Positions 1 through 58,620 of a stretch of DNA of 64,000 nt are shown piece after piece. Every line of letters begins with the position of its first letter. The stretch's first letter is position 1. The position numbers and the translations under genes are program-made. The notes beneath the pieces are model-generated. The model did not search any database, was not told the DNA's origin, and worked only from the letters and a program-made list of their open reading frames with translations. The stretch is from IMG/VR virus record IMGVR_UViG_3300020477_000990, positions 62,001 through 126,000 of that record; one strand, given 5' to 3'.

Positions 1-22
1 GACAGCAATTGCAATTCCTTTA

Positions 23-418
23 ATGGCGATGTTTATTGCAGATTTAGTTATAGGGTTTCATCCATATATGTTATGGGTCTATGGTGCAATAGGTTTATCA
101 ACTTTAATTAGTAAATGGTCAATGCAATTTAATAAAAAGTATATTCAATTAGGAGCAATGACAATAGTATCTTCTGTATTATTTTTTATAATAACAAATT
201 TTGCAGTATGGACTATGTGGGATTACTATCCAAAAACATTAGATGGTTTAATAATGTGTTATACAATGGCAATACCATTTTTTCAAAATACATTATTAGG
301 AACTATAATATATACAGCTCTAATGGCATCTTTAACTGTAGCATTAACTCGACCTTTTGAAAATACCTATGTACTGGTAATAAGCAAAGGAAGAGATTAT
401 GTTAACAAACATTTTTAA
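23..418 (+). CDS. DUF6580-like membrane protein (putative cobalamin-uptake component), probably 5'-truncated by the window edge
   Basis: Hydrophobic; SSVLFFIITNFAVW...YPKTLDGLIMCYTMAIPFF motif as I recall it for DUF6580; reading frame stays open to position 2; directly upstream of the TonB-dependent receptor. Confidence 0.65.
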   Translation: MAMFIADLVIGFHPYMLWVYGAIGLSTLISKWSMQFNKKYIQLGAMTIVSSVLFFIITNFAVWTMWDYYPKTLDGLIMCYTMAIPFFQNTLLGTIIYTALMASLTVALTRPFENTYVLVISKGRDYVNKHF

Positions 419-2213
419 GTTAATAATAATATTTTTTATTTTTTTAGGAACAGCAAAAGCAAACGAATGCTATTGGGAAGAAATGAAAGACGAAACAATC
501 GTTTGTGATTCGTTAGTTATTAATATACCAATATTTTTTACACAAACACCTTCACATAGAAGTAATGAAATACATAATAACGAATACATATTTCCAGACA
601 ACGAAAGTATTCTAACAGATGCATTAAATGATGTAGCAAATTTTAATGCAGTACGTTCTGGATCAAAAGGACAACAAACATCGTTGTTTACTAGAGGAAC
701 AAATTCAAATCATACATTAGTAACAATAAACGGATCAGCAATTACAGATCACTCAACAACTAATGGAGCAACAGATCTTAACAATGTAAATATAAATTTT
801 GCAGATGGTATACATTTGTATACAGGTCCTATGAGTACTATATATGGACCTAATGCAATAGGTGGTGTAGTTGATATTAAAACAAGTGATGTTAAAGAAA
901 ATGAAGTAGTAGTTACTTATGGATCTAACAATACCAAACAAACACATATTACAATTAGTGAAGGACTTACAAACTTTGGAATAAATTTTGAAGAATCAGA
1001 TGGTATATCAGTTTATCCAAAAGGTGATGAAAAAGATGGATACAACATACTTGGATTTAACTTTGGGCATTTAACAAAAATTGATAATACAGAAATTAAA
1101 ATAACAGGAATAACAAATAATACAGAATCAGATTTAGATGCCTCGGGTGCAGATGATTTAGACTATACAGCAGATACTAAATTCCATTTTGGACAAATAC
1201 AAACGTCTACAGAATTTGATGATGGAATTCTTAAATCAGTTTTAGATGCTACCTATTGGGATAGAGAATATGTAAATGGAACTGAACTTGATGAATATGA
1301 TTCTTCAGCTATACATTCAGCAACTGATTGGATAACACACACAGACAAAGTATCAACTAAAACTGGAATAGATACTGTTTGGTATAGTGCAGAATTTAAC
1401 AACAGAGGATCTTATAATTCTTCTGTAGATAAAGAAGCAAATACAACTGGAATATATCATAACTTTGATTATGTAACTGATTTAGATATAGTAGTGTCAG
1501 GTGGTTTACGTTATGATTATAATTCAATAGTAGAAGGGCAATCAACATACAGGGTTGGTACAGCATACAAAGGACTTTACTTTAGTAGGTCAACAGGGTA
1601 TAGAGCACCAACACTATATGAATTATATGGTGCAGACAATTACGGGTATAGTGGTAATGAAAATTTAAAAGCAGAAACTTCTGTAACAAATGAAGTAGGA
1701 TATAAATTTGGTAACCAAACGGTAAATGGTAATATTAGTGTTTACTCTACAAAAATAGAAGATATGATTACATACGGAAATTCTACTTATAGTAATGACA
1801 GTAATGGTACGTCAACAATGAAAGGTGGAGATATAAAACTTAACTACTACAAAGGAAATTATGGTTTTCATAATAGTATAGCATTTACGTCAGCACAAGA
1901 CTCAACTGATAATTGGTTAAAAAGAAGACCACATACGATTATCAATTCATCAGTTAGTTATTATAAAGATGATTTTTATATTTCTCCAAGTATAAATTAT
2001 TTTGGAAAACACAAAGATACACATTCGGTTGATTATTCAACGATAACTGTTGGGTCTGAAATTACAGCAGATATTAAAACTGGGTATCATTTAAATGACA
2101 ATTCTAAATTGGAATTAAGCATTAATAATATATTAGATAATGATTATGAAAGGCCACATGGTTATAATCAGGACGGAAGATCAATAAATCTTACAGTAAA
2201 ATGGAAATTTTAG
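399..2213 (+). CDS. btuB: TonB-dependent outer-membrane receptor, BtuB-like
   Basis: Signal peptide; plug motif QQTSLFTRGTNSNHTLVTINGS; GPMSTIYGPNAIGGVV; NILDNDYE...GYNQDGRS; C-terminal aromatic residue (..VKWKF). Confidence 0.8.
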   Translation: MLTNIFKLIIIFFIFLGTAKANECYWEEMKDETIVCDSLVINIPIFFTQTPSHRSNEIHNNEYIFPDNESILTDALNDVANFNAVRSGSKGQQTSLFTRGTNSNHTLVTINGSAITDHSTTNGATDLNNVNINFADGIHLYTGPMSTIYGPNAIGGVVDIKTSDVKENEVVVTYGSNNTKQTHITISEGLTNFGINFEESDGISVYPKGDEKDGYNILGFNFGHLTKIDNTEIKITGITNNTESDLDASGADDLDYTADTKFHFGQIQTSTEFDDGILKSVLDATYWDREYVNGTELDEYDSSAIHSATDWITHTDKVSTKTGIDTVWYSAEFNNRGSYNSSVDKEANTTGIYHNFDYVTDLDIVVSGGLRYDYNSIVEGQSTYRVGTAYKGLYFSRSTGYRAPTLYELYGADNYGYSGNENLKAETSVTNEVGYKFGNQTVNGNISVYSTKIEDMITYGNSTYSNDSNGTSTMKGGDIKLNYYKGNYGFHNSIAFTSAQDSTDNWLKRRPHTIINSSVSYYKDDFYISPSINYFGKHKDTHSVDYSTITVGSEITADIKTGYHLNDNSKLELSINNILDNDYERPHGYNQDGRSINLTVKWKF

Positions 2214-2227
2214 GAGTTGCTATGTCC

Positions 2228-2245: not shown

Positions 2246-2275
2246 AAGCTAAAGTAATTTAATAAAGTGGAAAAG

Positions 2276-3022
2276 ATGGCAAAAAAAACATTACATCCTT
2301 GGTACTTATTTTTCGCACAGGTAATAGCTCACTTGTCTATTATACCTATGATTCTATATGGCTCATGGTATCATTGGCTATTAGGTTTTGGAGTTTATTT
2401 CATAACAGGTTGTTTTGGAATGACAATGACATATCATAGATTGCTATCACATAATAGTTGGAATGCACCAAAGTGGTATGAGTATTTTGGATCATTATGT
2501 GGAACTTATGGACTAACAGGATCAACAATTGGATGGGTAGCAATACATAAAGAACATCATCATTTTACTGATCAAGAAAAAGATCCGCACTCTCCGGAAC
2601 ATCAAGGATTTTTTAGAGTGCAATGGTTAAGTATGTTTGAAGACCCTAATCCTCGATATGTTGTAAGACTAATTAGAGATCCAATTCATTTCTTTTTACA
2701 TAAATGGTATTTTGCTATTCATATTGTAATTGCAATAATTTGGTATCTTATTGATCCAATGTTATTAGTTGCCGCATATCTATTTCCAGCAATGATATTA
2801 TGGAATGCAGGATCGTTTATTAATACATTAACACATATGACAGGATATAGAAATTGGGAAACTAAAGACAATTCAACTAACATACCATTATTAGGAATTT
2901 TAATGTGGGGTGAAGGTTGGCATAATAATCATCATCATGATCCACAAAATAAATCATTCCAACATCATTGGTGGGAATTTGATATTGGTGGATATTTTAT
3001 TAGATTACTGGAACGCAAATGA
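2276..3022 (+). CDS. Membrane fatty-acid desaturase (delta-9/DesC-like)
   Basis: Three His boxes HRLLSH, HKEHH, HNNHH; GEGWHNNHH motif; ATG at 2276 preferred over GTG at 2267. Confidence 0.9.
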
Positions 3023-4485
3023 CAGATGTAAAAGATTCAATATCAAAAGAAACTATTAGTACAGTTAACAAATTGTCCGAGTATAAGCATGGCTGGGCAA
3101 CTGATATAGATAGTGATAAAATTCCAAAAGGTTTAAATGAAGATACTATTAAGTTAATATCATTTAAAAAGAAAGAGCCACAATGGATGTTACAATGGAG
3201 GCTTGATGCATACAAAGTTTGGAAAACATTAAAAGAACCTAAATGGGCAAAAGTAGATTTACCAAAAATAGATTATCAAGATTTATATTATTATTCAGCA
3301 CCAAAAGGTTTTGAAAATAAACCTAAGTCTTTAGATGAGCTAGATCCAAAACTTTTAGAAACATATGAAAAGTTAGGGATACCATTGTCAGAACAAAAAG
3401 CATTAAATGGCATAGCCGTAGATGCCGTATTTGATAGTGTATCTGTTGCTACTACATTTAAAGAAGAATTAAAAAAAGCTGGAGTAATATTTTGTCCTAT
3501 ATCAGAAGCAATAAAAGAACATCCTGAGTTAGTTAGAAAATATTTAGGTACAGTAATACCAATATCAGATCATTTTTATTCAGCATTAAATTCAGCAGTA
3601 TTTACAGATGGGTCTTTTGTTTATATTCCACCAGGAGTTAAATGTCCAATGGAGTTATCCACATATTTTAGAATTAATGAAGCAAAGACTGGGCAGTTTG
3701 AACGTACTTTAATTATAGCTGACAAAGGTAGCTATGTAAGTTATTTAGAAGGATGTACAGCACCAATGCGTGATGAAAACCAATTACACGCCGCTAACGT
3801 AGAACTTATTGCTTTAGATGATGCAGAAATAAAATATTCCACAGTACAAAATTGGTATCCAGGAGATGAAAATGGAAAAGGTGGAATTTATAATTTAGTA
3901 ACTAAACGTGGTAAGTGTAAAGGAAAGAATTCAAAAATATCTTGGACGCAAGTAGAGACAGGGTCAGCAGTAACTTGGAAGTATCCAAGCTGTATATTAC
4001 AAGGAGATAATTCTAAAGGAGAGTTTTATTCTGTAGCAGTAACTAATAATTATCAACAAGCAGATACAGGAACTAAAATGATTCACATAGGTAAGAATAC
4101 AACAAGTAGAATTATTTCAAAAGGTATATCATTAGGTAAATCACAAAATACATATAGAGGACTAGTAAATGTATTAAAAAATTCTCGTAAGTCAAGAAAC
4201 TATACGCAATGTGATTCATTGTTAATAGGAGATGAATGTGGGGCTCATACTGTTCCATTTATTAGAAATAGAAATAAAACTTCTGTAGTTGAGCATGAAG
4301 CATCAACATCTAAGATTAGTGATGATCAATTATTTTATTTAATGCAACGAGGAATAAGTCAAGAAGAAGCAGTAAGTTTAATTGTCAATGGTTTCTGTAA
4401 AGAAGTTTTACAACAACTGCCAATGGAATTTGCAGTTGAGGCACAAAAGTTAGTTAGCATTAGTTTAGAAGGTAGTGTAGGGTAA
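3019..4485 (+). CDS. sufB: Fe-S cluster assembly scaffold SufB
   Basis: [72 protein letters not shown]. Confidence 0.97.
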
Positions 4486-5087
4486 TGAAAATTGCAATCA
4501 CAGGGCATACGTCAGGAGTTGGAAAGTCTTTGTATGATAAGTTAGTAGGGCTTGGACATACGGTATTTGGATATAGTAGATCAAATGGATTTGATTTATC
4601 TAATAAAGATCAAGTTGCAAAGATAGTAAAGAAGATAGTTTATCGTGAGAATATAAATTACACTAAAGGTGGAATTAAATTTCAAGATGATGATGTAGAT
4701 GTTTTTATAAACAATGCTTATTACAATTGGTCACAAGTGGATTTATTATATAAAGTATATGAACCTTGGAAAGATAAAGATAAAATAATTATTAATATAG
4801 GTTCAGTTACAGGTGATAGTTCTAAAAAATATATGCATGAATACCAAGTGCATAAAGTTGCATTAGACAATGCCTGTAAACAATTACAACCTTTAGGTAT
4901 ATGTAAAGTAATAAATGTTCGTCCCGGGTGGGTTGATACTAATTTTAATCCTAAAAAAACTATTCCTAAAGATATTGAAATTTTAAAACCAGATCAAGTT
5001 GCAGATATTGTATTATACATTTTAAATCAACCTAAAGAAATATGTATAAAAACTATTTCTGTGGAACCATGGTATAAGGATGAGTAA
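4485..5087 (+). CDS. Short-chain dehydrogenase/reductase (SDR)
   Basis: TGHTSGVG Rossmann motif, FINNA, IINIGS, YxxxK (YQVHK). Confidence 0.85.
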   Translation: MKIAITGHTSGVGKSLYDKLVGLGHTVFGYSRSNGFDLSNKDQVAKIVKKIVYRENINYTKGGIKFQDDDVDVFINNAYYNWSQVDLLYKVYEPWKDKDKIIINIGSVTGDSSKKYMHEYQVHKVALDNACKQLQPLGICKVINVRPGWVDTNFNPKKTIPKDIEILKPDQVADIVLYILNQPKEICIKTISVEPWYKDE

Positions 5088-5692
5088 TGAAAAAACGTGT
5101 AGCAATTACTGGGCATACAGATGGTATTGGTAAAAATATATATAATACATTAAAAAAAAGTAAACAATATCTTGTTTCTGGATATTCATTAGATAATGAT
5201 TATAATATAGAAGATAGCCAAAAAATAATTAATGCTTGTATTGATGATGACATTTTTATAAACAATGCATTTGATGGATGGTCACAAGTTGACCTTCTTT
5301 ATAAATTATATACTAAATGGCAAGATCAAAATAAAACTATTATTAATATAGGTTCAGTTACTAGTGATACAAAAAATCCTGTAATAGAAAGATATCAAAT
5401 TCAAAAGAAGGCACTTGAAAATGCTTGTAAGCAATTACAGCCGTTAGGTAAATGTAAAGTAACTAATATTAAATTAGGATGGGTTGATTCTCCAATGATG
5501 GATCCATGGCTTAAAAAAGCAGACTTACCAAAAGATTTTAAAATTTTAAAGCCAAAGAATGTATCAGAAATAATATTATATATTTTAAATCAACCAAAGA
5601 ATATCTGTATAAAAGAAATTGCAATAGAACCTTGGCCATCAAGAGTATTGTTTAATCAATATAATCCAACAGCAAAAGGATGGCTAGAATAA
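5087..5692 (+). CDS. SDR, tandem paralog of 4485..5087
   Basis: TGHTDGIG, FINNA, IINIGS, YQIQK; shared NACKQLQPLG and ILNQPK.ICIK segments. Confidence 0.85.
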   Translation: MKKRVAITGHTDGIGKNIYNTLKKSKQYLVSGYSLDNDYNIEDSQKIINACIDDDIFINNAFDGWSQVDLLYKLYTKWQDQNKTIINIGSVTSDTKNPVIERYQIQKKALENACKQLQPLGKCKVTNIKLGWVDSPMMDPWLKKADLPKDFKILKPKNVSEIILYILNQPKNICIKEIAIEPWPSRVLFNQYNPTAKGWLE

Positions 5693-46698: not shown

Positions 46699-46701
46699 TT
46701 A

Positions 46702-50564: not shown

Positions 50565-50578
50565 TAATTAAAATATTT

Positions 50579-50611: not shown

Positions 50612-50663
50612 TTGGTATATAAACTTATACGTTAATATACAATGATAATCATAGCTAATATGC

Positions 50664-50671
50664 TATAAATA
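50664..50671 (+). promoter_or_regulatory. T4-type late promoter TATAAATA
   Basis: Exact box in the gap upstream of the 1028-aa fibre gene; short motif in an AT-rich genome. Confidence 0.6.
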
Positions 50672-50794
50672 ACTTTACAACCACCCCGAACGAAGGTGGA
50701 TAATAGAATAACAACGAGGCAGACCCTCCCGAAACTTTAATTTAATTTAATCGAGGAATAAACAAAATGTTTATTCACAAGGGAGAAATATACT

Positions 50795-53700
50795 ATGGCT
50801 AATGTTAAAAACTTTGGGCTATCAGGTATCGGTTCTGACGTACAATTTGGTAAAAGTGGCGGTCGTTTAATTTACGATTCAGCTTCTTCTTTCTTCAAAT
50901 TTACTACAGACGGTTCAACACTTGCACAGATTAGAGTTGCTACGACTCCATCTAACGCAAATGATGTTGCTTCTAAATCGTATGTTGATGCTACTAAATC
51001 AGGTCTTGATGTAAAAGATTCTGTTAGAGTGGCTACAACTGCGGCTGGTACTTTAGCTTCTAGCTTTGAAAACGGCGATGCTATCGACGGCATAACACTT
51101 GCGACTGACGATAGAATCTTAATTAAAAACCAGGCTGACGGTTCTGAAAATGGTGTTTACACAGTAAACGCATCAGGGGCTCCAACTAGAGCAACTGACT
51201 ACGACGCGAACTCTGAAGTTTCTGGTGGTGCTTTCTGTTTTGTAGAAGAAGGTACAACTAACGCAGATACTGGTTGGGTATTATCAAATGATGGTGCTAT
51301 CACAGTTGGTACAACTGCATTGACTTACACTCAGTTCTCTGGTGCAGGCTTAATTACAGCTGGCGCTGGTATGACTAAATCAGGTAACACTTTATCAGTT
51401 AACGTTGATGATACTACATTAGAAGTTAACGGTTCAGACAACCTGCAAATTAAATCAGACTGGACAGGTCAAAATACAATTACTACACTAGGTTCAATTG
51501 CTACTGGAACTTGGGCGGCAACTGATGTTGCTGTAGCACACGGTGGTACAGGTGCTTCTACGGCTTCTGGTGCAAGAACTAATTTAGGTGTTGCAATCGG
51601 ATCAGACGTACAGGCATACGATGCTCAATTGGCAGATGTTGCCGGTTTAGCGGTAACTGACGGTGGTATCATCGTTGGTGACGGTTCTAACTTCGTGTTA
51701 GAAACTGGTAATACAGCAAGAACATCACTAGGCTTAGGTACTGGTGATACTCCGACTTTCAACGGTGCGGCAATGGGTTCAGCGGCTATTACAGGCGTTG
51801 CAGATCCTTCAAACGCACAAGATGCCGCTACTAAGGCATACGTTGACGCGGCTACGGCTGGTCAAGATACACTTGCTGAAATGTCTGACACTAACATCAC
51901 AACTCCAGCTGATGGTTCTATGTTATTATATGACACAGGAAACTCAAAATGGATTGACAATGTAATGTCAGGTGATGCTACTATGACTGATGGTGGTGTT
52001 ATTACTTTAACAGACGGAAACTCTACAAGAACTAATTTAGGTCTTGCTATTGGTTCTGATGTACAGGCATATGACGCTCAATTGGCTGACGTGGCTGGCT
52101 TGGCTGTTACTGATGGTGGTTTCATTGTTGGTAATGGTTCTAACTTCGTATTAGAAACAGGCGCAACTGTTAGAACATCTTTAGGTTTAGGTTCAATTGC
52201 AACTCAAGCCGCTGATGCAGTAGCAGTAACAGGTGGTTCAATTACTGGAATCACTACATTTACTACAGGTACTTTAGGTTCTACAGCTACTTTCACTGGC
52301 GACGGTGAATTTACTGGTAACTTAACAGTTGGTGGTAACTTAACAGTTTCAGGTTCTAAAATTACTTTAGACGTTGGAACTGTGTCTTCAGAAGACAAAT
52401 ACATCCAAGTTAACTCTGGTGCAACTTCGCAAGAAACAGGTTTAGCAGGTGGTTTAGAAGTTAAAAGATCTTCTACTGCTGACACTAACCAATTTGCTTT
52501 CATTTCATTTGATGATTCAATTGACACATGGGCATTTAAAACTGGTTCGGCTAACCAAGCATCTACATCAGACGCAACTGTACGTTTTGGTACAGTTTCA
52601 GCTGGTACTTGGAATGGTACTGCAATTAGCAGAACATACGGTGGATTCGGCGCTTCAACTGCCGGTCACGGTAACAACTCACTTGTTGAAGCAGACGGTG
52701 GCGAGATCACTGTAGGCTCTTCAGGTCAATACTTAAGATCAGACGGTACTAACTATGCGGCATCTGCCTTACAGGCAAGTGACTTAAACGGTACTGTAGC
52801 TGTTAACCAAGGTGGTACTGGTATTACTGCTTTAGGATCAGCGAACAAATTCTTAGGTTCAACTGGTTCAGCTAACCAATATGACTACATCGGCGCTATC
52901 AGAGATACATCTGGTGTTGTTGGTTTAGAAATTAATGGTGCTTTAACAGATAATATCAAATTAAGATTGTCAAATACTTCATCTAACGTAACACTTCAAG
53001 CTATCGACCCTGATAACGGTTCAGCTGACATCGACCTAGTTCTTAAAGGACAAGGCGACGGTGTTGTTGTAATTTCTGAATCAGCTGGTGGTAACTCACT
53101 TGTTATGGCGGACGACAATATGGACTTAACTATCTCAGGTGGTGCGGCGAGCGGTGCTCATGCTGGTGACTCTGTTATCAAAGGTGGTAACGGTACTGGT
53201 GCGTACAATTCAGGTGACGTTAAAATCCAAGGTGGTACTGGTGGTGCGGCTGAAGGTAAAGTTAAAATTTTAGACTCATCTTCAAACGAAGTTGCATTGT
53301 TCGAAAGAACTGCTTCTGCTGTTAATGAATTATCATTCACTAACGCGGCGGCTTCAGGTGCTCCAACTATTTCATCAACTGGTGATGACACTCATATTAA
53401 CATCGCATTATCTCCAAAAGGTAATGGTGTTGTTACAGTTCCAGCGAACTATGAGTCATTAACTATTACTGATGACACTCTTGTTACTAAAGCATGGGTG
53501 AATGCTAACGTAGTTACTTCAACTGATGACCTGACTCTTAGAGCGGCTATCACTACAGGTGCAACTACAGGTGCAATTGGTACAATGCCAAATGCAGGTT
53601 CAACAACTTATTACGTATCTAAAGTAATCGTATACGTTTCAACTGCTTTCTCAGGAAACTCAGTTGATCACGTTACTTTATCAGATGGTACTACAACTTG

Positions 53701-53881
53701 GGTAGCTGATGCTGACGCTGATGTTTCTACAGCTGGTACTTACGTAATTGATGTTCCTTTTGCTACAGCAACGGCTGGCGGCGCTACTTTCACTTTATCT
53801 TACAGAGATGCAAGTGCAAATTTAGTTGCTCCAACAGGTGGTGCTGGTATTGTTACTGTTGAATACAAAGCATTAACTTAA
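50795..53881 (+). CDS. Long tail-fibre/virion structural protein (1028 aa)
   Basis: Gly/Ala/Thr/Ser-rich; DVASKSYVD and DAATKAYVD knob repeats; LDVKDSVRVATT..DRILIKNQ..ENGVY fibre module; internal duplication. Confidence 0.85.
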   Translation: MANVKNFGLSGIGSDVQFGKSGGRLIYDSASSFFKFTTDGSTLAQIRVATTPSNANDVASKSYVDATKSGLDVKDSVRVATTAAGTLASSFENGDAIDGITLATDDRILIKNQADGSENGVYTVNASGAPTRATDYDANSEVSGGAFCFVEEGTTNADTGWVLSNDGAITVGTTALTYTQFSGAGLITAGAGMTKSGNTLSVNVDDTTLEVNGSDNLQIKSDWTGQNTITTLGSIATGTWAATDVAVAHGGTGASTASGARTNLGVAIGSDVQAYDAQLADVAGLAVTDGGIIVGDGSNFVLETGNTARTSLGLGTGDTPTFNGAAMGSAAITGVADPSNAQDAATKAYVDAATAGQDTLAEMSDTNITTPADGSMLLYDTGNSKWIDNVMSGDATMTDGGVITLTDGNSTRTNLGLAIGSDVQAYDAQLADVAGLAVTDGGFIVGNGSNFVLETGATVRTSLGLGSIATQAADAVAVTGGSITGITTFTTGTLGSTATFTGDGEFTGNLTVGGNLTVSGSKITLDVGTVSSEDKYIQVNSGATSQETGLAGGLEVKRSSTADTNQFAFISFDDSIDTWAFKTGSANQASTSDATVRFGTVSAGTWNGTAISRTYGGFGASTAGHGNNSLVEADGGEITVGSSGQYLRSDGTNYAASALQASDLNGTVAVNQGGTGITALGSANKFLGSTGSANQYDYIGAIRDTSGVVGLEINGALTDNIKLRLSNTSSNVTLQAIDPDNGSADIDLVLKGQGDGVVVISESAGGNSLVMADDNMDLTISGGAASGAHAGDSVIKGGNGTGAYNSGDVKIQGGTGGAAEGKVKILDSSSNEVALFERTASAVNELSFTNAAASGAPTISSTGDDTHINIALSPKGNGVVTVPANYESLTITDDTLVTKAWVNANVVTSTDDLTLRAAITTGATTGAIGTMPNAGSTTYYVSKVIVYVSTAFSGNSVDHVTLSDGTTTWVADADADVSTAGTYVIDVPFATATAGGATFTLSYRDASANLVAPTGGAGIVTVEYKALT

Positions 53882-54645: not shown

Positions 54646-55881
54646 CTACTGTGAAATTCGCCCTAATATTGAACACATTTTTTCAGCTGAATACCCACGT
54701 GCTTTATCATAATAGGCCAATAAATCTTGGGTGTTTTTGTAGGTGTACGTTGTTTTACGTTTTTTAATTAGTTCTATAAAGTCAGATACAAAACTATATT
54801 TTGTAGCTTCAAAAGGCGATCCTGCTGATCTAATTAATAAAAGAACTTCATTAATAACTTCTTCTTTTATATCATCTGGAAGTATAGCCAAGTCTAATGG
54901 TTTAGGCCACATTACTAATACAGGAATAAATTCATCAAAGTTATTTTCTTCTGTGTATCTAATTAAATCAGGAAGTTGATCTAAATTTAATAATTGTATT
55001 GCTGATGTTAATACTGAACTAATATTATTAAAACCTTTTTCTTTAATTAATCTGTTAAACTTATATTGATTATTAAAAACTTTATTCCAAGTTGCAGGCC
55101 ATCTAATATATTCAAATGTACTACCCATTCCATCTGTAGACCAATGCACTTCAAATTTTTGAAACTTATTCATTATGTCTATCATCTTTGTTAAGTCAGT
55201 TGTACCATTTGTTACCATCATTATAGAAATGTTTCTTGCATATTTTGTTTCAGATAATCTTTTAATAAATTCTCTAAAGCCTTCTAATAATGTAGGCTCA
55301 CCTCCTGTAAATTTTATTTTTTGTATAGTATGAGCTGTACCTAATAATTCATTTAATTGCTTTTCATGGAAGTTAGTATTATGAGCATCATCTGGAATAT
55401 GTTTTTTTAAATGTAAAGGAACTTTATGTTGCTCTTTTTCTTTAACGTGTAAAGATGAACTATGTCCATCACACATAATACAAGCAAGATTACATTTGTT
55501 ACCAAACTTTATATCTAATGTTCTTAATTCTAAATGTTTATCTTTTTTAATTTTATTTAAAAAATCTGGATCAATATCTTCATAACGTTTTGTAATAGAA
55601 TATCTTTTACTCATATTGTATGCACCAGACTGTTCATATTGATAACATCTAGTACAAGACTTAACTGGTTTATTATCTAACATTTTTTGTCTAATGTCAT
55701 TTAATACTTTACTGTTTTTCCAATTATTAATAAATGAATCTTTATATAAATCTGCTTCAACAGTTTCTGAATAACAACATAACATTGAATGGCCTTGTGC
55801 TGAATTGGCTATTTCAGTAAATGGTAAAGCACAAAAATACTTGCCATGATCATTTAAAAACTTTTCATATTCTCTACTCAT
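54646..55881 (-). CDS. N-terminal-twitch radical SAM protein (similar to 43743..45014)
   Basis: FCALPF..LCC..CTRC; KFGNKCNLACIMC; TGGEP. Confidence 0.85.
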   Translation of the reverse strand: MSREYEKFLNDHGKYFCALPFTEIANSAQGHSMLCCYSETVEADLYKDSFINNWKNSKVLNDIRQKMLDNKPVKSCTRCYQYEQSGAYNMSKRYSITKRYEDIDPDFLNKIKKDKHLELRTLDIKFGNKCNLACIMCDGHSSSLHVKEKEQHKVPLHLKKHIPDDAHNTNFHEKQLNELLGTAHTIQKIKFTGGEPTLLEGFREFIKRLSETKYARNISIMMVTNGTTDLTKMIDIMNKFQKFEVHWSTDGMGSTFEYIRWPATWNKVFNNQYKFNRLIKEKGFNNISSVLTSAIQLLNLDQLPDLIRYTEENNFDEFIPVLVMWPKPLDLAILPDDIKEEVINEVLLLIRSAGSPFEATKYSFVSDFIELIKKRKTTYTYKNTQDLLAYYDKARGYSAEKMCSILGRISQ

Positions 55882-57130
55882 TTAGTTCTGCCCCAATGAC
55901 AGGTGTTAATCCTTTTACTGCTTTATTAAACATAGCTTCTGTCATATCGTTATGTTTTGATTTTTGTACACATAATCCACAGCCACATATTTTATTTGGA
56001 CAAGTTATTACAGGCATTTTACCTGTTGCTAATTGTTTTTCTAATCTTAATAATACTTTTTCACTTTCTGATATCTTACCAATAGGCCCACGTTTACCAC
56101 CAAAATTTGCACGACAAGTTTGATGGTGTAGTATATTATCATATTCTTGTTCAATATGTAACCAATTCCAATTAATTAAGCAAGACCAATCTTTGTATTC
56201 TGTTGAACACGCAAACACACTTGGATTCCATTTATCAGTATCAAGTTCTTTATTATTGTTATTATAATGATCATCAGTTAATGTATAAAATGTTCTTTGC
56301 CCACAGCAAGGTCTTCCTAAACTTTTTCTACCTTCATCTTTTTTAGGTTCAACTTTTGCTTTTTGTTTTTGTACTTTTTCTTGATCATCTTTATATTCAT
56401 ATTCAGCATCATTGTTTTCATCTATTTTTTTAGGTTGCTTTTGATTATTTTCTTTTTTATTTCTAATTGCCCAAAACTCTCTAAACCATTTATGTTGTTC
56501 TGGAGTATATCTATGATTGTACTTGTCATTTTCATAGCTCTCTCCAATAATTCTTGGTACAAATTTTACATTATCTCTTGTAAACTTTCCAACTAAATCA
56601 ATACATTCATTAAAGTATTCTTCTTTAGCATGAAACATTAAATTAACTTTGTGTCTAACATTTGAATCTTTTAATTGATAAATTCTATCTATTACTTTAT
56701 TTTTTATTTTTTGATCTGCTTCACAATGATAACTTACTGTTACACTATCAACATTATCAATTAATTTTGTACAATATTTTTCTGACATGGCACCATTAGT
56801 TGTTACATCAACTATTACATCATCATCATTTTGATTGTGTATGTATTCACACATATCTAAAAAGTTTGGATTGTTAGTTGGCTCACCGCCTGTAAAACCA
56901 ATGTTCCACTTACGTTTGTAAGTCATATATGATTGTAAAAGTTTTTTATAATCAAAAACAAACTTACTTGTTTTAATTAATGTTTCTAAACTTGCGTGAG
57001 GTGAAGTATTATTATGTCTATGTGAAGGACAATATGTACAATCAAAATTACATCTTAAACCTAAATCCCAAGTTACTTCAAATGAGTAAGGATTTTTTAT
57101 ATTATTATCTATTGCAATTATCTCTGACAT
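55874..57130 (-). CDS. Radical SAM protein with C-terminal twitch-like cysteines (same type as 15961..17127)
   Basis: WDLGLRCNFDCTYC; FTGGEPT; C-terminal C...CPNKICGCGLC. Confidence 0.85.
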   Translation of the reverse strand: MSEIIAIDNNIKNPYSFEVTWDLGLRCNFDCTYCPSHRHNNTSPHASLETLIKTSKFVFDYKKLLQSYMTYKRKWNIGFTGGEPTNNPNFLDMCEYIHNQNDDDVIVDVTTNGAMSEKYCTKLIDNVDSVTVSYHCEADQKIKNKVIDRIYQLKDSNVRHKVNLMFHAKEEYFNECIDLVGKFTRDNVKFVPRIIGESYENDKYNHRYTPEQHKWFREFWAIRNKKENNQKQPKKIDENNDAEYEYKDDQEKVQKQKAKVEPKKDEGRKSLGRPCCGQRTFYTLTDDHYNNNNKELDTDKWNPSVFACSTEYKDWSCLINWNWLHIEQEYDNILHHQTCRANFGGKRGPIGKISESEKVLLRLEKQLATGKMPVITCPNKICGCGLCVQKSKHNDMTEAMFNKAVKGLTPVIGAELNE

Positions 57131-57846
57131 TAATATCTATTAAACGCCCAATATCTTTCATGACACCACCAACAATCTTCACAAGGTGTAAGGTAACCAT
57201 TTGTTTGTTCAAATGTTCCTTCACATGACCAAGTCAACGGAAATAAATTGCTCATTAAGTTTTCTTGTTTGTAAATGTCAGCAATAAATTTTTTATCTGT
57301 ATTAAAAAAAGGTCTATGAGAAGAACCATCACTAGTAACTAGTTCATGATTAACTTTTGGATCTCGTCTATTTTTTTGATCAGTATCATAAGGCATTTCC
57401 CCTTTCGGTGGGTTAGATGTTATACCATCATATAAGACATCCCACACGCCTGTTTCTTCATTTTGTTTATTTCTATCTTGAAACTCTTTCCATTCAGTTT
57501 GATTTACATCTTTTAAATCTGGATAATAAACTAAATGAGGTAACATATTTCTAAAATTAAGTATTTCAGTAATTTTATTAATAACATGGGTTGCTTTTAT
57601 AGGATTCCATGGACGTTGTCTTCTAACTGACATTGGTTGTATCTTTACATCTAAATTATTTCTTATTACTTCTTTACAAAGTAAGTAAAGTAAAGCACTA
57701 GAGTCTGCTCCACCAGAACACCATATTCCTAGAGTCTTAACCTTGCGTCCATTATTGACAACACTTGGAATTATGATTTCAACTGATTCTGTTTTATCAA
57801 TATTATAATATTTTGCCGATACTTCTGTTAGTATTTCAAATGTCAT
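57130..57846 (-). CDS. QueC-like PP-loop ATPase (third paralog)
   Basis: CSGGADS; SC...CEDCWWC; N-terminus like 19340..20185 (EIIIP.VVNN). Confidence 0.75.
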   Translation of the reverse strand: MTFEILTEVSAKYYNIDKTESVEIIIPSVVNNGRKVKTLGIWCSGGADSSALLYLLCKEVIRNNLDVKIQPMSVRRQRPWNPIKATHVINKITEILNFRNMLPHLVYYPDLKDVNQTEWKEFQDRNKQNEETGVWDVLYDGITSNPPKGEMPYDTDQKNRRDPKVNHELVTSDGSSHRPFFNTDKKFIADIYKQENLMSNLFPLTWSCEGTFEQTNGYLTPCEDCWWCHERYWAFNRY

Positions 57847-57870
57847 ATTATTACCCTGTTATATGTATAT

Positions 57871-58620
57871 TTATTTGTAGTTTTTAATTACATTTTCTGA
57901 GTAGTCATTCAATGCACTTCTATCGTATCCACCGTCAACATTTGTATCAATTAATGAATGCATTATGAAGTCTGCCATTATATTATGTTTTTCTTGTGTG
58001 TTAAAATGATTTTCACATGACTCAATGTCTTCTATAGAGCACCCGTCCATAGTTGCAATGCTCATACAACTTGGTCTTATTTCTAAACCATTTTCCCAAG
58101 TATGCAAATATTTTATATTATCAGGATGATAGTCAGTAACATTATGCCCATAAGACCATAAGTGAATTATTTTTCTGTCGGTTGGAATTTTACTCAAAAC
58201 AGTTTGATCAAACCAAAACAAACAAGATTGATATTCAGCTATTTCTTTTTTATCATCTTGAATATATTTAAAATATTTTTCACTTGCATCTACATATTCA
58301 TCTTTAACTTTACCTTTTTTCCACCATACTTTTTTTGGATCAGGGTTTAAATGAATACCATCTTTGTTATAAATTCTAGCACTAGAAGTCCAGCAAAATA
58401 TTAATATATCTGGAACATTAATAATACCTTCTTCGTTTGGTTTTAATGTAAATTGATTTAATGGAATATCCCAATATGATGTTCCACCTTGCCCAGAATG
58501 AACAATGTCTAGATTAAATTTTTCTGCAACAATGTGAGGCCAAGTTTTGAGATCACCTTTTTTTTCTTTCCAAACTTCTACAAAGCTATCTCCGTATAGG
58601 CCAATTTTAATATGACTCAT
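57871..58620 (-). CDS. SGNH/GDSL-like hydrolase or acyltransferase
   Basis: YGDSF block I, WP..V, GQGG, NHF near the C-terminus. Confidence 0.55.
   Translation of the reverse strand: MSHIKIGLYGDSFVEVWKEKKGDLKTWPHIVAEKFNLDIVHSGQGGTSYWDIPLNQFTLKPNEEGIINVPDILIFCWTSSARIYNKDGIHLNPDPKKVWWKKGKVKDEYVDASEKYFKYIQDDKKEIAEYQSCLFWFDQTVLSKIPTDRKIIHLWSYGHNVTDYHPDNIKYLHTWENGLEIRPSCMSIATMDGCSIEDIESCENHFNTQEKHNIMADFIMHSLIDTNVDGGYDRSALNDYSENVIKNYK

What the first reader, a model, noticed from the sequence alone, without database searches (positions are those of the whole stretch)
1..58620. Phage-borne tailoring-enzyme supercluster that supplies its own Fe-S, B12 and reducing power
Seen: 10 radical SAM proteins, 13 Fe/2OG oxygenases, 3 QueC-like ATPases, a carbamoyltransferase, SET, GNAT, kinase-like, PLP, ABM, 3 SDR and sulfotransferase genes, mostly in translationally coupled operons. 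They are interleaved with sufB/C/D, fpr, a BtuB-like receptor and a DUF6580-type gene. Known: radical SAM enzymes need [4Fe-4S] clusters and a flavodoxin/Fpr reductant, and class B enzymes also need cobalamin. Inference: this is a coherent pathway with its own cofactor logistics, not a scatter of auxiliary metabolic genes. No PKS/NRPS scaffold is present, so the substrate is probably a macromolecule: virion proteins or glycans, phage DNA/tRNA, or the host surface. I know of no described pathway with this composition.
Basis: partly seen in the sequence, partly recalled or inferred. Interest (0 to 1): 0.88.

Follow-up and report, generated by a model that had tools for sequence, protein, structure and literature searches.

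The report
Jumbo-phage radical-SAM and oxygenase tailoring gene block
A 328-kb marine jumbo phage carries a conserved, very enzyme-rich gene block (10 radical SAM enzymes, about 13 iron/2-oxoglutarate oxygenases, sugar-tailoring genes) with its own iron-sulfur scaffold genes; similar cassettes occur in many ocean phages, but what they modify is unknown.

Summary
The window is bases ~62,001-126,000 of a 328,149-bp Tara Oceans contig (IMG/VR UViG_3300020477_000990) that is a jumbo phage.

I confirmed:
- 10 radical SAM genes: 7 N-terminal-twitch paralogs (NF033640), 2 MoaA-like, 1 B12-type.
- 13 Fe/2OG-type oxygenases: 8 by Pfam or paralogy, 5 by motif only.
- 3 QueC-like PP-loop ATPases.
- SufB, SufC, a truncated SufD, an Fpr-like reductase, and a BtuB-like receptor overlapping an ECF-S-fold DUF6580 gene.

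- For: the left ~23 kb is a syntenic block kept at 60-92% amino-acid identity in at least four other viral contigs. A core cassette (N-twitch rSAM, MoaA-like rSAM, QueC-like, AspH-like, GT-B glycosyltransferase) recurs across well over 100 IMG/VR loci.
- Against a single supercluster: tRNAs, a tmRNA, small ORFs and tail-fibre genes interrupt the region, and more rSAM/SET genes lie outside the window.
- Cofactor supply is incomplete: no SufS/SufE and no flavodoxin. The suf genes move or are absent in the syntenic relatives.
- Precedents exist: Nishimura 2017 and Zaragoza-Solas 2020.

The substrate is unknown. I favour a surface glycoconjugate. Verdict: a new variant of a known kind.

The parts
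1..418 (+). DUF6580 membrane protein with an ECF S-component fold. The gene starts ~133 nt upstream of the window; the full gene is L007:9469-10020 (183 aa).
   Evidence: Pfam PF20221, E 2e-28. AF2 pLDDT 78; the top 8 Foldseek PDB hits are all ECF S components, including BtuM 8c7p at TM 0.56. It overlaps the receptor gene by 20 nt.
399..2213 (+). TonB-dependent outer-membrane receptor, BtuB-like
   Evidence: Plug plus barrel domains. Best NCBIfam family is TIGR01779 TonB-B12: 199.8 bits, E 7e-59, below the cut-off. It has a signal peptide. A 62%-identical ortholog sits in the same position in relatives.
2267..3022 (+). Membrane FA-desaturase/hydroxylase-like di-iron enzyme. A paralog lies at 25680-26411.
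   Evidence: PF00487. The two paralogs are 32% identical.
3019..4485 (+). SufB
   Evidence: NF008773, 903 bits, above the 717-bit cut-off.
4485..6297 (+). Two short SDR paralogs (4485-5087, 5087-5692) and a GNAT acetyltransferase (5680-6297)
6294..8075 (+). Class-B (B12-type) radical SAM, KedN5-like C-methyltransferase family
   Evidence: PF04055. NF033712 E 7e-46 over profile positions 61-391, score below the cut-off. Orthologs at 79-92% identity in 7 viral contigs.
8075..8839 (+). 2OG-oxygenase-like (HxE...H), paralog of 10095-10805
8847..10095 (+). SufC (8847-9530) and a truncated SufD-like protein (9517-10095, 192 aa)
   Evidence: TIGR01978, 240.9 bits, above the 212.8-bit cut-off. The SufD profile is matched only over positions 82-264 of 275, at 131.7 bits, below the 222-bit cut-off.
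10095..10805 (+). 2OG-Fe(II) oxygenase
   Evidence: PF13640, E 3.6e-5.
10892..12032 (-). SET-domain methyltransferase (10892-11239) overlapping an Asp/Asn-beta-hydroxylase-family 2OG oxygenase (11217-12032)
   Evidence: The pair is conserved in relatives. A second SET plus partner pair lies outside the window.
12159..15970 (+). Three tandem N-terminal-twitch radical SAM paralogs
   Evidence: NF033640, 250 and 324 bits for the two tested (12159, 14750), above the 170-bit cut-off; 13495 is assigned by 46% identity to 12159. The Cys residues of the auxiliary and rSAM clusters are invariant.
15961..17127 (+). MoaA/viperin-like radical SAM; the most conserved gene of the set
   Evidence: PF04055, E 2e-13. 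Orthologs at 74-92% identity.
17124..19343 (+). AspH-like 2OG oxygenase (17124-17657), PLP-aminotransferase-like protein (17650-18555), ABM-like protein (18548-18823), SDR (18816-19343)
19289..20185 (+). QueC-like PP-loop ATPase. Paralogs at 45901-46698(-) and 57130-57846(-).
20185..22877 (+). NodU/CmcH-type carbamoyltransferase (20185-21666) and NDP-sugar dehydrogenase (21663-22877)
   Evidence: Orthologs at 76-91% identity in relatives.
22846..24228 (+). N-twitch radical SAM
   Evidence: NF033640, 273.8 bits.
24276..25034 (+). Ferredoxin/flavodoxin-NADP reductase-like protein (Fpr)
   Evidence: PF00970 plus PF00175. PRK10926 E 2e-38, score below the cut-off. In the closest SufB relatives it lies directly upstream of sufB.
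25031..30138 (+). Six 2OG/cupin-like genes (25031, 26415, 27019, 27824, 28266; TauD-family 29137) and the FA-desaturase paralog (25680)
   Evidence: Pfam support exists only for 25680 and 29137. The others rest on the HxD...H(R) motif.
33232..34584 (+). N-twitch radical SAM
   Evidence: NF033640, 319 bits.
35834..36412 (+). AspH-like 2OG oxygenase
   Evidence: PF05118, E 6e-10. An 87%-identical copy lies next to sufB in the 242-kb relative L029.
37007..42361 (+). FAD oxidoreductase (DAO, 37007-38062), membrane protein (38322-39290), class-II aaRS-core-like protein (39353-40225), kinase-like protein (40409-41131), sulfotransferase (41711-42361). tRNA genes lie between them.
   Evidence: Their membership in the pathway is not shown.
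42352..43746 (+). GT-B-fold glycosyltransferase-like protein from a family without a Pfam model
   Evidence: AF2 pLDDT 92. The top Foldseek hits are VldE, trehalose-6-P synthases and glycogen synthase. It is present in 27 of 56 cassette loci.
43743..45014 (+). N-twitch radical SAM
   Evidence: NF033640, 238 bits.
45901..48755 (-). QueC-like ATPase (45901-46698) and two TauD-family oxygenases (46702-47721, 47721-48755)
   Evidence: No other viral relative of the TauD gene 47721-48755 was found.
48932..53881 (+). Two virion / tail-fibre-like genes (Mtd_N N-terminus; a 1028-aa repeat protein) at 40% GC, embedded among the cassettes
54646..59224 (-). Cassette on the minus strand, listed in order of transcription: HAD (58634-59224), unknown protein with a GDS motif (57871-58620), QueC-like (57130-57846), MoaA-like rSAM (55874-57130), N-twitch rSAM (54646-55881)
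   Evidence: The same family set recurs in 56 viral loci. KVP40 has QueC-like, two N-twitch rSAMs and a HAD gene together.
61727..62431 (+). Nitroreductase-family protein, an occasional companion of the cassettes
   Evidence: It lies next to N-twitch arrays or QueC-like genes in L082, L118, L177 and L178.

Best explanation
SHOWN: the interval is part of a ~328-kb marine jumbo myophage. Its left ~23 kb is a conserved operon-like block. The whole interval contains three copies or variants of a recurrent, largely virus-specific cassette: arrays of N-terminal-twitch radical SAM enzymes, a MoaA-like radical SAM, a QueC-like PP-loop ATPase and an AspH-family oxygenase. The cassette often comes with a GT-B glycosyltransferase, an SDR, a PLP-aminotransferase-like protein, an NDP-sugar dehydrogenase and a carbamoyltransferase.

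INFERRED:
(1) These enzymes act in series as a tailoring pathway on a common scaffold. Tandem duplication of the rSAM and oxygenase genes diversifies the product.
(2) The most likely scaffold is a sugar-containing surface macromolecule: host envelope glycan or glycolipid, or glycosylated virion proteins. The cassettes sit around the tail-fibre genes, as in the 'host recognition cluster' of pelagimyophages. The outcome would be altered surface recognition, for example superinfection exclusion or virion decoration.
(3) SufB, SufC, the truncated SufD and Fpr act in trans. They raise Fe-S scaffold capacity and NADPH-derived electron supply for the phage's >=11 Fe-S enzymes. Sulfur mobilisation (SufS/SufE) and the flavodoxin or ferredoxin carrier would come from the host.
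(4) The BtuB-like receptor and the ECF-S-like DUF6580 protein import a corrinoid for the single class-B radical SAM that follows them.
For: Phage identity.

Conserved synteny: at least four other viral contigs keep the block at 60-92% amino-acid identity.

Cassette linkage, N-twitch-anchored set: in 80 loci (69 non-redundant), 72 have at least 2 N-twitch copies (up to 7). MoaA-like is present in 56, AspH in 33, QueC-like in 31, SDR in 16 and PLP-like in 11. In 65 SufB-anchored control loci the counts are 0, 2, 0, 0 and 0 (Fisher p from 1e-3 to 3e-21).

Cassette linkage, independent anchor (MoaA-like rSAM, 56 loci): N-twitch in 50, AspH in 34, QueC-like in 32, GT-B in 27. GT-B versus control gives p = 5e-6.

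Sugar-related genes: NDP-sugar dehydrogenase, NodU-type carbamoyltransferase, GT-B fold protein, aminotransferase-like motif, SDRs, GNAT, sulfotransferase and HAD. NeuB and a CMP-sugar synthetase lie next to an N-twitch array in L082.

Tail-fibre genes lie inside the region. Published parallel: the pelagimyophage host recognition cluster holds tail fibres, glycosyltransferases and rSAM cassettes, and AspH is a core gene there (PMC7029224).

Fe-S support: SufB and SufC reach equivalog level. A compact fpr-sufB-x-sufC-sufD' operon exists in the nearest SufB relatives. N-twitch rSAMs lie within 10 kb of sufB in 4 of 65 other viral sufB loci. Published precedent: a T4-like viral genome with an A-type carrier plus 12 rSAM genes (PMC5332604).

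B12: DUF6580-TBDT stays 2-4 genes upstream of the class-B rSAM in five contigs. DUF6580 has the ECF-S fold, and BtuM is among the top hits. btuB-btuM co-localisation is documented in bacteria (PMC6072759).
Against: No enzyme has an assigned substrate. The N-twitch family is uncharacterised.

Some dense rSAM arrays contain no recognisable sugar genes (L185).

SET, GNAT, AspH-family and SPASM/twitch rSAM enzymes are typical protein- or peptide-modifying families.

The suf genes are absent from the syntenic block in four relatives, and Suf and Fpr are absent within 10 kb in all 136 cassette loci. Physical linkage of cofactor genes and cassettes is therefore peculiar to this phage and a few relatives.

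SufD is truncated. SufS, SufE and flavodoxin were not found in the ~102 kb examined.

The receptor scores far below the BtuB cut-off, has no cobalamin riboswitch and has no relative in 185,579 genomes by the pattern search. A 73%-identical DUF6580 lies in other phages beside a DnaB-like helicase, with no receptor nearby.

Five of the 13 'oxygenases' rest on a motif only.
Confidence: 0.4

Rival explanations
1. Protein or peptide post-translational modification. The rSAM arrays, AspH-like hydroxylases, SET and GNAT would modify a ribosomal peptide (RiPP-like, as in proteusin-type clusters), or virion or host proteins such as tail fibres or the translation apparatus.
For: - SPASM/twitch rSAMs give weak hits to many peptide maturases, e.g. 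SkfB at E 7e-8.
- The SET-AspH pair is conserved and duplicated.
- GNAT is conserved next to the class-B rSAM.
- The phage encodes bL31, bL12, a tmRNA and an aaRS-core-like protein.
- Some arrays contain no sugar genes.
- From my own knowledge: polytheonamide-type clusters combine class-B rSAM, rSAM epimerase, 2OG hydroxylase and methyltransferase.
Against: - No precursor-like repeated small ORFs, and no Pfam leader or RRE hit, among the ten small ORFs scanned with Pfam and the small ORFs read by eye in 30-36 kb.
- The N-twitch enzymes carry a Cys-rich domain where an RRE usually sits.
- No peptidase or exporter was found.
- GT-B, NDP-sugar dehydrogenase and carbamoyltransferase recur with the cassette.
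Confidence: 0.22
2. No common pathway. The region is an accretion zone (hypervariable island) in which independent auxiliary metabolic cassettes and paralog expansions pile up. Each acts on a different host metabolite, and the Suf/Fpr/TBDT genes are general host-boosting AMGs.
For: - The interval is interrupted by tRNAs, a tmRNA, small ORFs and structural genes.
- Gene content differs between relatives by cassette gain and loss: the QueC-like gene 19289, the duplicate 12159 and the suf genes are variable.
- The TauD gene tested (47721-48755) has no detected viral relative.
- Fe-S AMGs are common in viromes irrespective of rSAM genes.
Against: - A 17-gene order is conserved at 60-92% identity across contigs from different samples.
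- Four to six families are strongly and reproducibly linked in 136 loci.
- Start/stop overlaps are pervasive.
Confidence: 0.2
3. Import and remodelling of a small molecule. The receptor and the ECF-S-like protein would bring in a corrinoid, siderophore-like or nucleoside compound, and the downstream enzymes would modify it, for example by cofactor remodelling.
For: - A transporter pair heads the conserved block.
- BtuB is the best-matching family.
- DUF6580 has the ECF-S fold, and BtuM is among the top hits.
- Nitroreductase-family genes (the family of BluB, from my own knowledge) accompany some arrays.
- A MoxR/VWA pair lies nearby.
Against: - Most cassette loci have no transporter.
- No cob or cbi genes were seen.
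- No riboswitch was found.
- The sugar-nucleotide genes are not explained.
Confidence: 0.1
4. Nucleic-acid hypermodification. The enzymes would build a modified base or sugar adduct on phage DNA or on tRNA: GT-B enzymes as DNA glycosyltransferases, and QueC-like plus rSAM as a deazapurine-like branch.
For: - QueC-like ATPases sit beside MoaA/QueE-like rSAMs.
- T4 DNA glucosyltransferases have the GT-B fold (my own knowledge).
- The phage carries its own tRNAs.
- Kinase-like and FAD-oxidoreductase genes are present, as in thymidine hypermodification clusters (my own knowledge).
Against: - No FolE, QueD or DpdA/TGT, no dNMP hydroxymethylase, and no TET/JBP Pfam hit in the window.
- The QueC match is only a weak C-terminal one.
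- The NCBIfam QueE hits are weaker than the MoaA hits.
Confidence: 0.08

Closest known systems
Fe-S-related AMG sets in marine environmental viral genomes (Nishimura et al. 2017, PMC5332604): T4-like TARA_ERS488813_N000010 with an A-type carrier and 12 radical SAM genes
   Same: An uncultured marine phage combines many radical SAM genes with its own Fe-S assembly gene. The authors' interpretation was that viral Fe-S assembly serves virus-encoded Fe-S enzymes.
   Different: Here the assembly genes are SufB, SufC and a truncated SufD plus Fpr, rather than an ATC or IscU. The backbone is PA5oct/SCTP-2-like jumbo rather than T4-like. A BtuB-like receptor, 13 oxygenases and sugar-tailoring genes are added. 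I show conserved synteny and cassette co-occurrence, which that paper did not address (to my reading of the passages).
Host recognition cluster (hypervariable island) of pelagimyophages and cyanomyophages (Zaragoza-Solas et al. 2020, PMC7029224)
   Same: [quoted passage not shown] An Asp/Asn beta-hydroxylase is a core gene. Divergence proceeds by cassette addition.
   Different: The phage backbone and genome size differ. The enzyme density is much greater. Suf/Fpr/TBDT genes are present. Part of the region is syntenic across relatives rather than hypervariable.
Vibrio phage KVP40 (NC_005083.2, 133.5-137.7 kb): QueC-like, PF04095-like, two radical SAM genes and a 30.2-like HAD gene
   Same: Both KVP40 rSAMs are N-twitch-family members (tblastn E 4e-13 and 1e-11 to window gene 14750-15970). 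They sit with a QueC-like gene and a HAD gene, like window 54646-59224.
   Different: Identity is only 22-25%. The QueC-like and HAD proteins were not detectably similar by tblastn. No MoaA-like rSAM, oxygenases or Suf genes are nearby. The function in KVP40 is unknown as well.
SUF Fe-S assembly system (SufABCDSE)
   Same: SufB and SufC meet the equivalog models. The SufD-like fragment keeps the C-terminal core that pairs with SufB.
   Different: SufS, SufE and SufA are absent. SufD lacks its N-terminal half. The genes are split by unrelated genes here, and their position varies in relatives.
BtuB-BtuM cobalamin uptake pair (Rempel et al. 2018, PMC6072759)
   Same: A small TonB-dependent receptor is adjacent to a ~20-kDa solitary S-component-fold membrane protein, next to a B12-type enzyme.
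   Different: No sequence match to BtuM was found. The invariant Cys lies elsewhere in the sequence (C131, versus Cys80 in BtuM; not compared structurally). The receptor scores below the BtuB cut-off. There is no riboswitch. The pair is encoded by a phage.
Proteusin / polytheonamide-type RiPP clusters (own knowledge)
   Same: The enzyme palette is similar: class-B rSAM, further rSAMs, 2OG hydroxylase and methyltransferase.
   Different: No precursor, leader-peptide family, protease or RRE was detected. Sugar-nucleotide genes are present.

Membership tests
Radical SAM superfamily | CxxxCxxC cluster motif and PF04055 core | tested here: met
   All 10 genes meet both. Two of the Pfam scores are just below the gathering cut-off, but the NCBIfam scores are strong.
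NF033640 N-terminal-twitch radical SAM subfamily | Whole-protein score above the curated cut-off (170 bits), with a Cys-rich domain N-terminal to the rSAM core | tested here: met
   Scores of 238-324 bits for the five tested. The other two are paralogs (E 1e-17 to 1e-137). Four N-terminal Cys and the CxxxCxxC motif are invariant in all seven.
Class B (cobalamin-dependent) radical SAM | N-terminal cobalamin-binding domain followed by the rSAM core | tested here: inconclusive
   6294-8075 aligns to the KedN5 B12-rSAM profile at positions 61-391 (E 7e-46) and to several other B12-rSAM models. All scores are below the cut-offs, and there is no Pfam B12-binding hit at E<=0.001.
SUF Fe-S assembly system | SufB, SufC and SufD scaffold | tested here: inconclusive
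   SufB and SufC are above the equivalog cut-offs. SufD is a 192-aa fragment below the cut-off.
SUF Fe-S assembly system | Cysteine desulfurase SufS with SufE/SufU | tested here: not met
   None was found among the Pfam-scanned window genes or in the gene tables of the flanks, contig 43-145 kb. The rest of the contig was not seen.
Fpr (ferredoxin/flavodoxin-NADP reductase) | FAD_binding_6 plus NAD_binding_1 two-domain architecture; equivalog score | tested here: inconclusive
   Both domains are present. PRK10926 scores 131.8 bits against a 390-bit cut-off. No flavodoxin or ferredoxin partner was found.
BtuB (TonB-dependent cobalamin receptor) | Plug plus 22-strand barrel; family score; cobalamin riboswitch or btu neighbours | tested here: inconclusive
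   The domains are present and BtuB is the best family, but the score is 199.8 against a 599.7-bit cut-off. No riboswitch was found. The neighbour has an S-component fold.
BtuM (solitary ECF-S-type B12 transporter) | S-component fold; invariant Cys in loop 3 ligating cobalt | tested here: inconclusive
   The fold is met weakly (TM 0.56, E 0.4; ThiT and RibU fit equally well). There is no sequence match. The invariant Cys is at position 131 and was not mapped onto BtuM Cys80.
Fe(II)/2-oxoglutarate oxygenases | HxD/E...H facial triad in a DSBH fold | tested here: inconclusive
   Eight are supported by Pfam or paralogy. Five are supported by motif only, and the profile comparison was negative or uninformative. 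No structure was predicted for them.
QueC (7-cyano-7-deazaguanine synthase) | PP-loop SGGxDS, Zn-binding C-terminal Cys; pathway partners FolE, QueD, QueE | tested here: not met
   The motifs are present. Only the C-terminal ~60 residues match PF06508, at 22-25 bits. No NCBIfam QueC hit and no FolE or QueD were found. I describe the genes as QueC-like, not as QueC.
RiPP biosynthetic gene cluster | Precursor peptide gene(s), RRE or leader-recognition domain, peptidase or exporter | tested here: not met
   None was recognised among the small ORFs. Divergent precursors cannot be excluded.
Diversity-generating retroelement (Mtd target) | Reverse transcriptase plus TR/VR repeat pair | tested here: not met
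   Only the 36-residue Mtd_N domain matches. There is no RT Pfam hit. The repeats in 44.5-55 kb are internal to the fibre gene or lie between the TauD paralogs.
Pelagimyophage-type host recognition cluster | Tail fibres with glycosyltransferases and rSAM cassettes; T4-like backbone between VrlC and gp14 | tested here: inconclusive
   The composition is met. The backbone looks PA5oct/SCTP-2-like rather than T4-like. VrlC and gp14 were not searched for.

The most novel reading that the evidence does not exclude
The N-terminal-twitch rSAM arrays, together with the MoaA-like rSAM, the QueC-like ATPase, the AspH-like oxygenase and the Pfam-less GT-B enzyme, form a virus-specific biosynthetic system. 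It would be in effect a viral biosynthetic gene cluster family present in hundreds of marine phages. It would build a new class of radical-tailored glycoconjugate or peptide. In this jumbo phage it has recruited its own Fe-S scaffold, reductase and corrinoid-uptake genes.
Probability: 0.3. Interest if true: 0.85.

Novelty: new variant of a known kind. Interest (0 to 1): 0.64.

Why it matters
Marine phage genomes are known to carry radical SAM cassettes, 2OG oxygenases and Fe-S assembly genes. These have been treated as loose auxiliary genes of unknown role.

This work shows three things:
- A defined set of families travels together across well over 100 viral loci.
- One ~23-kb version is syntenic in several related phages.
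- The main enzyme family (N-terminal-twitch rSAM, at least 1,500 homologs) is almost absent from 185,579 cellular species genomes by a pattern-limited search.

This turns a vague category into a testable system: a conserved block that can be cloned and expressed. If the product is a surface glycoconjugate, it bears on how abundant ocean phages manipulate receptor landscapes. If it is something else, it is new enzymology.

A phage-encoded outer-membrane receptor plus an S-component pair next to a B12-type enzyme would be an unusual case of a virus importing a vitamin for its own enzyme.

Tried and rejected
Searches that found nothing or little:
- Megablast of bases 1-25,000 against phage records gave no match.
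- The genome-contig scan for the receptor found no relative. The scan with the closer alignment A6 found only two Bdellovibrionales/Bacteriovoracaceae MAG contigs. As a result the host could not be inferred from SufB or the receptor.
- Sequence searches of PDB were uninformative for DUF6580, the QueC-like trio, 42352, 17650 and 15961.
- hhalign of the motif-only oxygenase trio against the other oxygenase groups was inconclusive.
- Pfam on 60 homologs of 42352 gave no family; only the structure prediction identified the fold.
- The Rfam scan upstream of DUF6580/TBDT found no cobalamin riboswitch.
- Literature searches found nothing on DUF6580, NF033640, or QueC-like plus rSAM in phages. The marine jumbo-phage paper (PMC9123017) does not mention the search terms I used.

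Ideas considered and set aside:
- The small ORFs at 30-36 kb as RiPP precursors: no repeats or leader domains; they include a lipoprotein and membrane proteins.
- A DGR around the Mtd_N gene: rejected.
- 'Marine virus AG-345-D19' as a relative: only 3-5 weak hits.
- GenBank 'Microcystis phage MaAM05' as a cultured-phage precedent for sufBCD: rejected, because the region looks bacterial.
- A cellular genomic island: rejected on the structural-protein homology and the flanking genes.

Full report
1. WHERE THE WINDOW COMES FROM

Exact-protein look-ups place the window at about bases 62,001-126,000 of JGI metagenome contig Ga0211585_10000017 (328,149 bp, sample 3300020477). This is IMG/VR entry UViG_3300020477_000990. 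Identical genes occur on many other marine assemblies.

The DNA is ~30% G+C, apart from 40% in 50-54 kb.

Evidence that the contig is a phage and not a cellular island:
- Genes 48932-50284 and 50795-53881 hit PHROGs for tail, tail fibre, head decoration and virion structural proteins. They also match virion proteins of jumbo phages.
- A 658-aa protein just left of the window is 34-39% identical over its full length to a structural protein of Salicola phage SCTP-2 and Pseudomonas phage PA5oct.
- The flanks (contig 43-62 kb and 126-145 kb) hold very large ORFs (1,845 aa; an S8 peptidase with He_PIG), an HNH endonuclease, a MoxR/VWA pair, a cell-wall hydrolase, a polysaccharide lyase and dozens of small ORFs without Pfam hits.
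- The window has five tRNA genes and an alphaproteobacterial-type permuted tmRNA.
- No terminase, portal or capsid gene fell in the ~102 kb I could see.

2. THE OBSERVATION

Pfam, NCBIfam and PHROG scans of about 70 ORFs, plus an all-against-all BLASTP, confirm the inventory.

Radical SAM genes (ten in all):
- Seven are paralogs that pass the curated cut-off of NCBIfam NF033640, 'twitch domain-containing radical SAM protein'. Five were tested directly (238-324 bits against a 170-bit cut-off). All seven share four invariant N-terminal cysteines and the CxxxCxxC motif.
- Two (15961, 55874) are a MoaA/viperin-like pair.
- One (6294-8075) aligns best to B12-dependent C-methyltransferase models (KedN5 family, E 7e-46, score below the cut-off).

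Oxygenases: thirteen candidates fall into five groups.
- An AspH-family trio.
- A TauD-family trio.
- The pair 8075/10095.
- A trio plus 25031 sharing PHxDxxY...HGV.
- 28266.
Eight are supported by Pfam or paralogy. Five rest on the HxD...H motif alone.

QueC-like genes: three paralogs have the PP-loop SGGxDS and a C-terminal Cys cluster, but match QueC only weakly.

Cofactor-related genes:
- SufB (903 bits) and SufC (241 bits) reach equivalog level.
- 'SufD' is a 192-aa C-terminal fragment.
- The Fpr-like protein has both FNR domains.
- The 604-aa TonB-dependent receptor has a signal peptide, plug and barrel. BtuB is its best-scoring family, at 199.8 bits against a 599.7-bit cut-off.

Its family keeps an Asp...Ala and SxSK...GxRxG pattern typical of fold-type-I aminotransferases. 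ABM and the kinase are weak hits.

Thirty-nine of 53 same-strand neighbours overlap or lie within 10 nt.

The last has no Pfam hit but folds with pLDDT 92 into a GT-B glycosyltransferase-like structure; all of the top ~30 Foldseek PDB hits are GT-B enzymes.

3. IS IT ONE COHERENT THING?

Three comparisons bear on this.

(a) Close relatives. A scan with the class-B rSAM found seven viral contigs with 79-92% identical orthologs. In four of them (UViG_3300001460_000019, 3300007541_007157, 3300020469_004256, 3300020420_000873) the gene order is kept at 60-92% amino-acid identity:

DUF6580, TBDT, FA-desaturase, (SDR), GNAT, class-B rSAM, 2OG, 2OG, SET(-), AspH(-), N-twitch, N-twitch, MoaA-like rSAM, PLP-like, (ABM), SDR, carbamoyltransferase, NDP-sugar dehydrogenase.

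The left ~23 kb of the window is therefore a conserved block, not a chance juxtaposition. The differences are cassette-like:
- The window has an extra N-twitch copy (12159, a 46%-identical tandem duplicate of 13495).
- It has an extra QueC-like gene (19289).
- It has sufB inserted after the desaturase, and sufC-sufD' inserted between the two 2OG genes.
Two other relatives (including the 242,646-bp contig from the same sample) keep sufC-sufD' in that position but lack the receptor. In that 242-kb contig, sufB lies ~90 kb away next to an 87%-identical AspH-like gene.

(b) Distant relatives. At least 529 stretches in IMG/VR encode N-twitch rSAMs. The protein database holds at least 1,519 homologs at E<=1e-10. 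In 80 loci anchored on an N-twitch gene (69 after removing near-duplicates):
- 72 have two to seven copies.
- The window's other families recur: MoaA-like rSAM in 56, AspH-like in 33, QueC-like in 31, SDR in 16, GT-B in 14, PLP-like in 11, FA-desaturase in 8, carbamoyltransferase in 7.
- In 65 control loci anchored on viral sufB, MoaA-like, QueC-like, SDR and PLP-like are absent and AspH-like is present in 2.

An independent anchor, the MoaA-like rSAM 55874, gave 56 further loci. N-twitch was present in 50, AspH in 34, QueC-like in 32 and GT-B in 27.

Recurrent gene orders include:
- QueC-like, N-twitch, MoaA-like on one strand, with a divergent AspH.
- FA-desaturase, AspH, GNAT, six or seven N-twitch genes, GT-B, NDP-sugar dehydrogenase, carbamoyltransferase.

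A 303,728-bp contig has about eight N-twitch genes plus a 76%-identical ortholog of 15961 within 21 kb. Cultured Vibrio phage KVP40 has a small version: QueC-like, two N-twitch rSAMs and a HAD gene.

(c) Cellular genomes. A pattern scan of 185,579 species genomes with a subfamily alignment found only two MAG contigs, from Bdellovibrionales and Bacteriovoracaceae. The sensitivity of that scan is limited. Even so, the family looks predominantly viral.

Against 'one supercluster':
- The interval is broken by ~3 kb of ordinary small phage ORFs, the tmRNA, tRNAs and two virion genes.
- The TauD gene tested (47721-48755) has no detected viral relative.
- Another SET plus partner pair and another rSAM/SPASM gene lie at contig ~143-145 kb, outside the window.

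4. THE COFACTOR-LOGISTICS CLAIM

Fe-S:
- The scaffold genes are real, but the sulfur donor (SufS/SufE) is missing from the ~102 kb inspected, and SufD is half-length.
- In the nearest SufB relatives (82% identity), fpr-sufB-x-sufC-sufD' forms a compact operon 6 kb from an Mtd_N-like fibre gene. Fpr and Suf therefore belong together as a module.
- That module is not part of the tailoring block in most relatives. None of the 136 cassette loci has it within 10 kb.
- N-twitch genes do lie within 10 kb of sufB in 4 of 65 other viral sufB loci. My rough estimate is that this is well above background.
- The reading I favour is support in trans, as Nishimura et al. proposed for a T4-like viral genome with an A-type carrier and 12 rSAM genes.
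- Fe-S AMGs, including sufB, are already reported from viromes and phage genomes.

Reducing power: Fpr is present, but no flavodoxin or ferredoxin was found.

B12:
- The DUF6580-receptor pair heads the conserved block, with the only class-B rSAM two to four genes downstream, in five contigs.
- DUF6580 folds as an ECF S component. The top eight PDB hits are all S components, and BtuM is among the best at TM 0.56.
- btuB-btuM co-localisation is known in bacteria.
- Against: there is no riboswitch, no sequence match to BtuM, and the S-component fold does not reveal specificity.
- Also against: a 73%-identical DUF6580 sits in other phages after a DnaB-like helicase, near NadA and SufE, with no receptor.
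- I rate the B12 reading plausible but unproven.

5. WHAT IT MOST LIKELY DOES

Shown: a conserved, translationally coupled, phage-borne set of redox and group-transfer enzymes.

Inferred: they act in series on one scaffold, with paralog arrays diversifying the product.

The substrate is not established. I favour a sugar-containing surface macromolecule, for these reasons:
- The recurrent companions are an NDP-sugar dehydrogenase, a NodU-type carbamoyltransferase, a GT-B enzyme, an aminotransferase-like protein, SDRs, a GNAT, a sulfotransferase and a HAD.
- One N-twitch array sits beside NeuB and a CMP-sugar synthetase.
- The cassettes surround tail-fibre genes, as in the pelagimyophage 'host recognition cluster'. 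There, glycosyltransferases and rSAM cassettes accompany tail fibres and AspH is a core gene.

The main rival is protein or peptide modification. SET, GNAT, AspH-family and SPASM/twitch rSAMs are typical protein-modifying families, and some arrays have no sugar genes. Against it, no precursor, RRE, protease or exporter was seen.

Small-molecule or corrinoid remodelling, nucleic-acid hypermodification, and 'no common pathway' are less likely but not excluded.

6. COMPARISON AND NOVELTY

The phenomenon is known in outline. Marine myophages carry rSAM cassettes, many 2OG oxygenases and Fe-S AMGs.

New here:
- The scale in a single jumbo phage: at least 11 rSAM and about 13 oxygenase genes.
- The SufB/SufC/truncated-SufD plus Fpr set.
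- The BtuB-like receptor with an S-component gene at the head of the block.
- The demonstration of a syntenic block and of a statistically linked core cassette across many viral contigs.
- The finding that the frequent partner 42352-43746 is a GT-B enzyme from a large family with no Pfam model: 8,184 representatives at E<=1e-3.

I found no paper on the function of the N-twitch family or of DUF6580.

I file the finding as a new variant of a known kind, with interest 0.64. It is real and rich, and can now be tested as a defined block, but it has no established product.

Noticed in passing
window 32937-33228 (+): Alphaproteobacterial-type permuted tmRNA (Rfam RF01849, 131.6 bits; also RF04321) on the phage. 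It ends just before the start of the rSAM gene at 33232. It suggests an alphaproteobacterial host.
   Followed up: partly
window 36915-36991, 38065-38216, 40258-40344, 54329-54402: Five tRNA genes (Met, Arg, Gln, Leu-TAA, Leu-CAG) are interspersed with the enzyme genes. A class-II aaRS catalytic-core-only protein (39353-40225) lies between tRNA-Gln and tRNA-Leu.
   Followed up: partly
window ~60661-60894 (-); L081 16414-16812: The phage encodes homologs of ribosomal proteins bL31 (in the window) and bL7/L12 (contig ~141.4 kb).
   Followed up: no
window 48932-53881: The two virion / tail-fibre genes have 40% G+C against ~30% elsewhere. The 1028-aa gene contains internal 180-nt repeats (51573 / 52026, 78% identical). 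Only the first ~36 residues of 48932-50284 match Mtd_N, and there is no DGR reverse transcriptase or TR/VR pair.
   Followed up: partly
L081 17607-18744 and from 19999 (contig ~142.6-145.3 kb): A second SET-domain gene overlaps a ~281-aa partner, the same arrangement as window 10892-12032. A further rSAM/SPASM gene lies outside the window.
   Followed up: no
L007 1689-2780 and 5207-6457 (contig ~54-59 kb): A MoxR-type AAA ATPase and a DUF2201/VWA protein form a pair left of the window. From my own knowledge, this kind of pair is often annotated CobS/CobT-like in marine phages.
   Followed up: no
window 42352-43746: This protein belongs to a very large family (8,184 cluster representatives at E<=1e-3) with no Pfam model in any of 60 members scanned. 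The predicted fold is a GT-B glycosyltransferase.
   Followed up: yes
L168-L171 (6001-6507): A 73%-identical DUF6580 gene sits in other marine phage contigs directly after a DnaB-like helicase. It is near RecA/UvsX-like, PolB, NadA (an Fe-S enzyme), SufE and MT-A70 genes. DUF6580 is therefore a widespread phage gene independent of the receptor.
   Followed up: partly
L172 (GenBank MW495066.1, 259.8-273.9 kb): The end of the record 'Microcystis phage MaAM05' carries pxpA, panB, panC and sufBCDS-iscU. It looks like bacterial DNA, so it is a doubtful precedent for sufBCD in a cultured phage.
   Followed up: partly
window 34651-34854 (+): A 67-aa ORF has a lipoprotein-type signal peptide and lipobox (…LTGC…). 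It lies among small membrane-protein ORFs downstream of the rSAM gene at 33232.
   Followed up: no
window 57871-58620 (-): This 249-aa protein has no family hit but has an N-terminal GDS motif reminiscent of SGNH hydrolases. It sits between the QueC-like and HAD genes.
   Followed up: no
L164 / L082 (MAG contig JAYUQP010000091.1, 178,731 bp): A contig binned as Bdellovibrionales carries at least five N-twitch rSAM genes with AspH and a nitroreductase, next to NeuB, a CMP-sugar synthetase, an LPG-synthase-like gene and an M16 peptidase. Whether it is cellular or viral was not resolved.
   Followed up: partly
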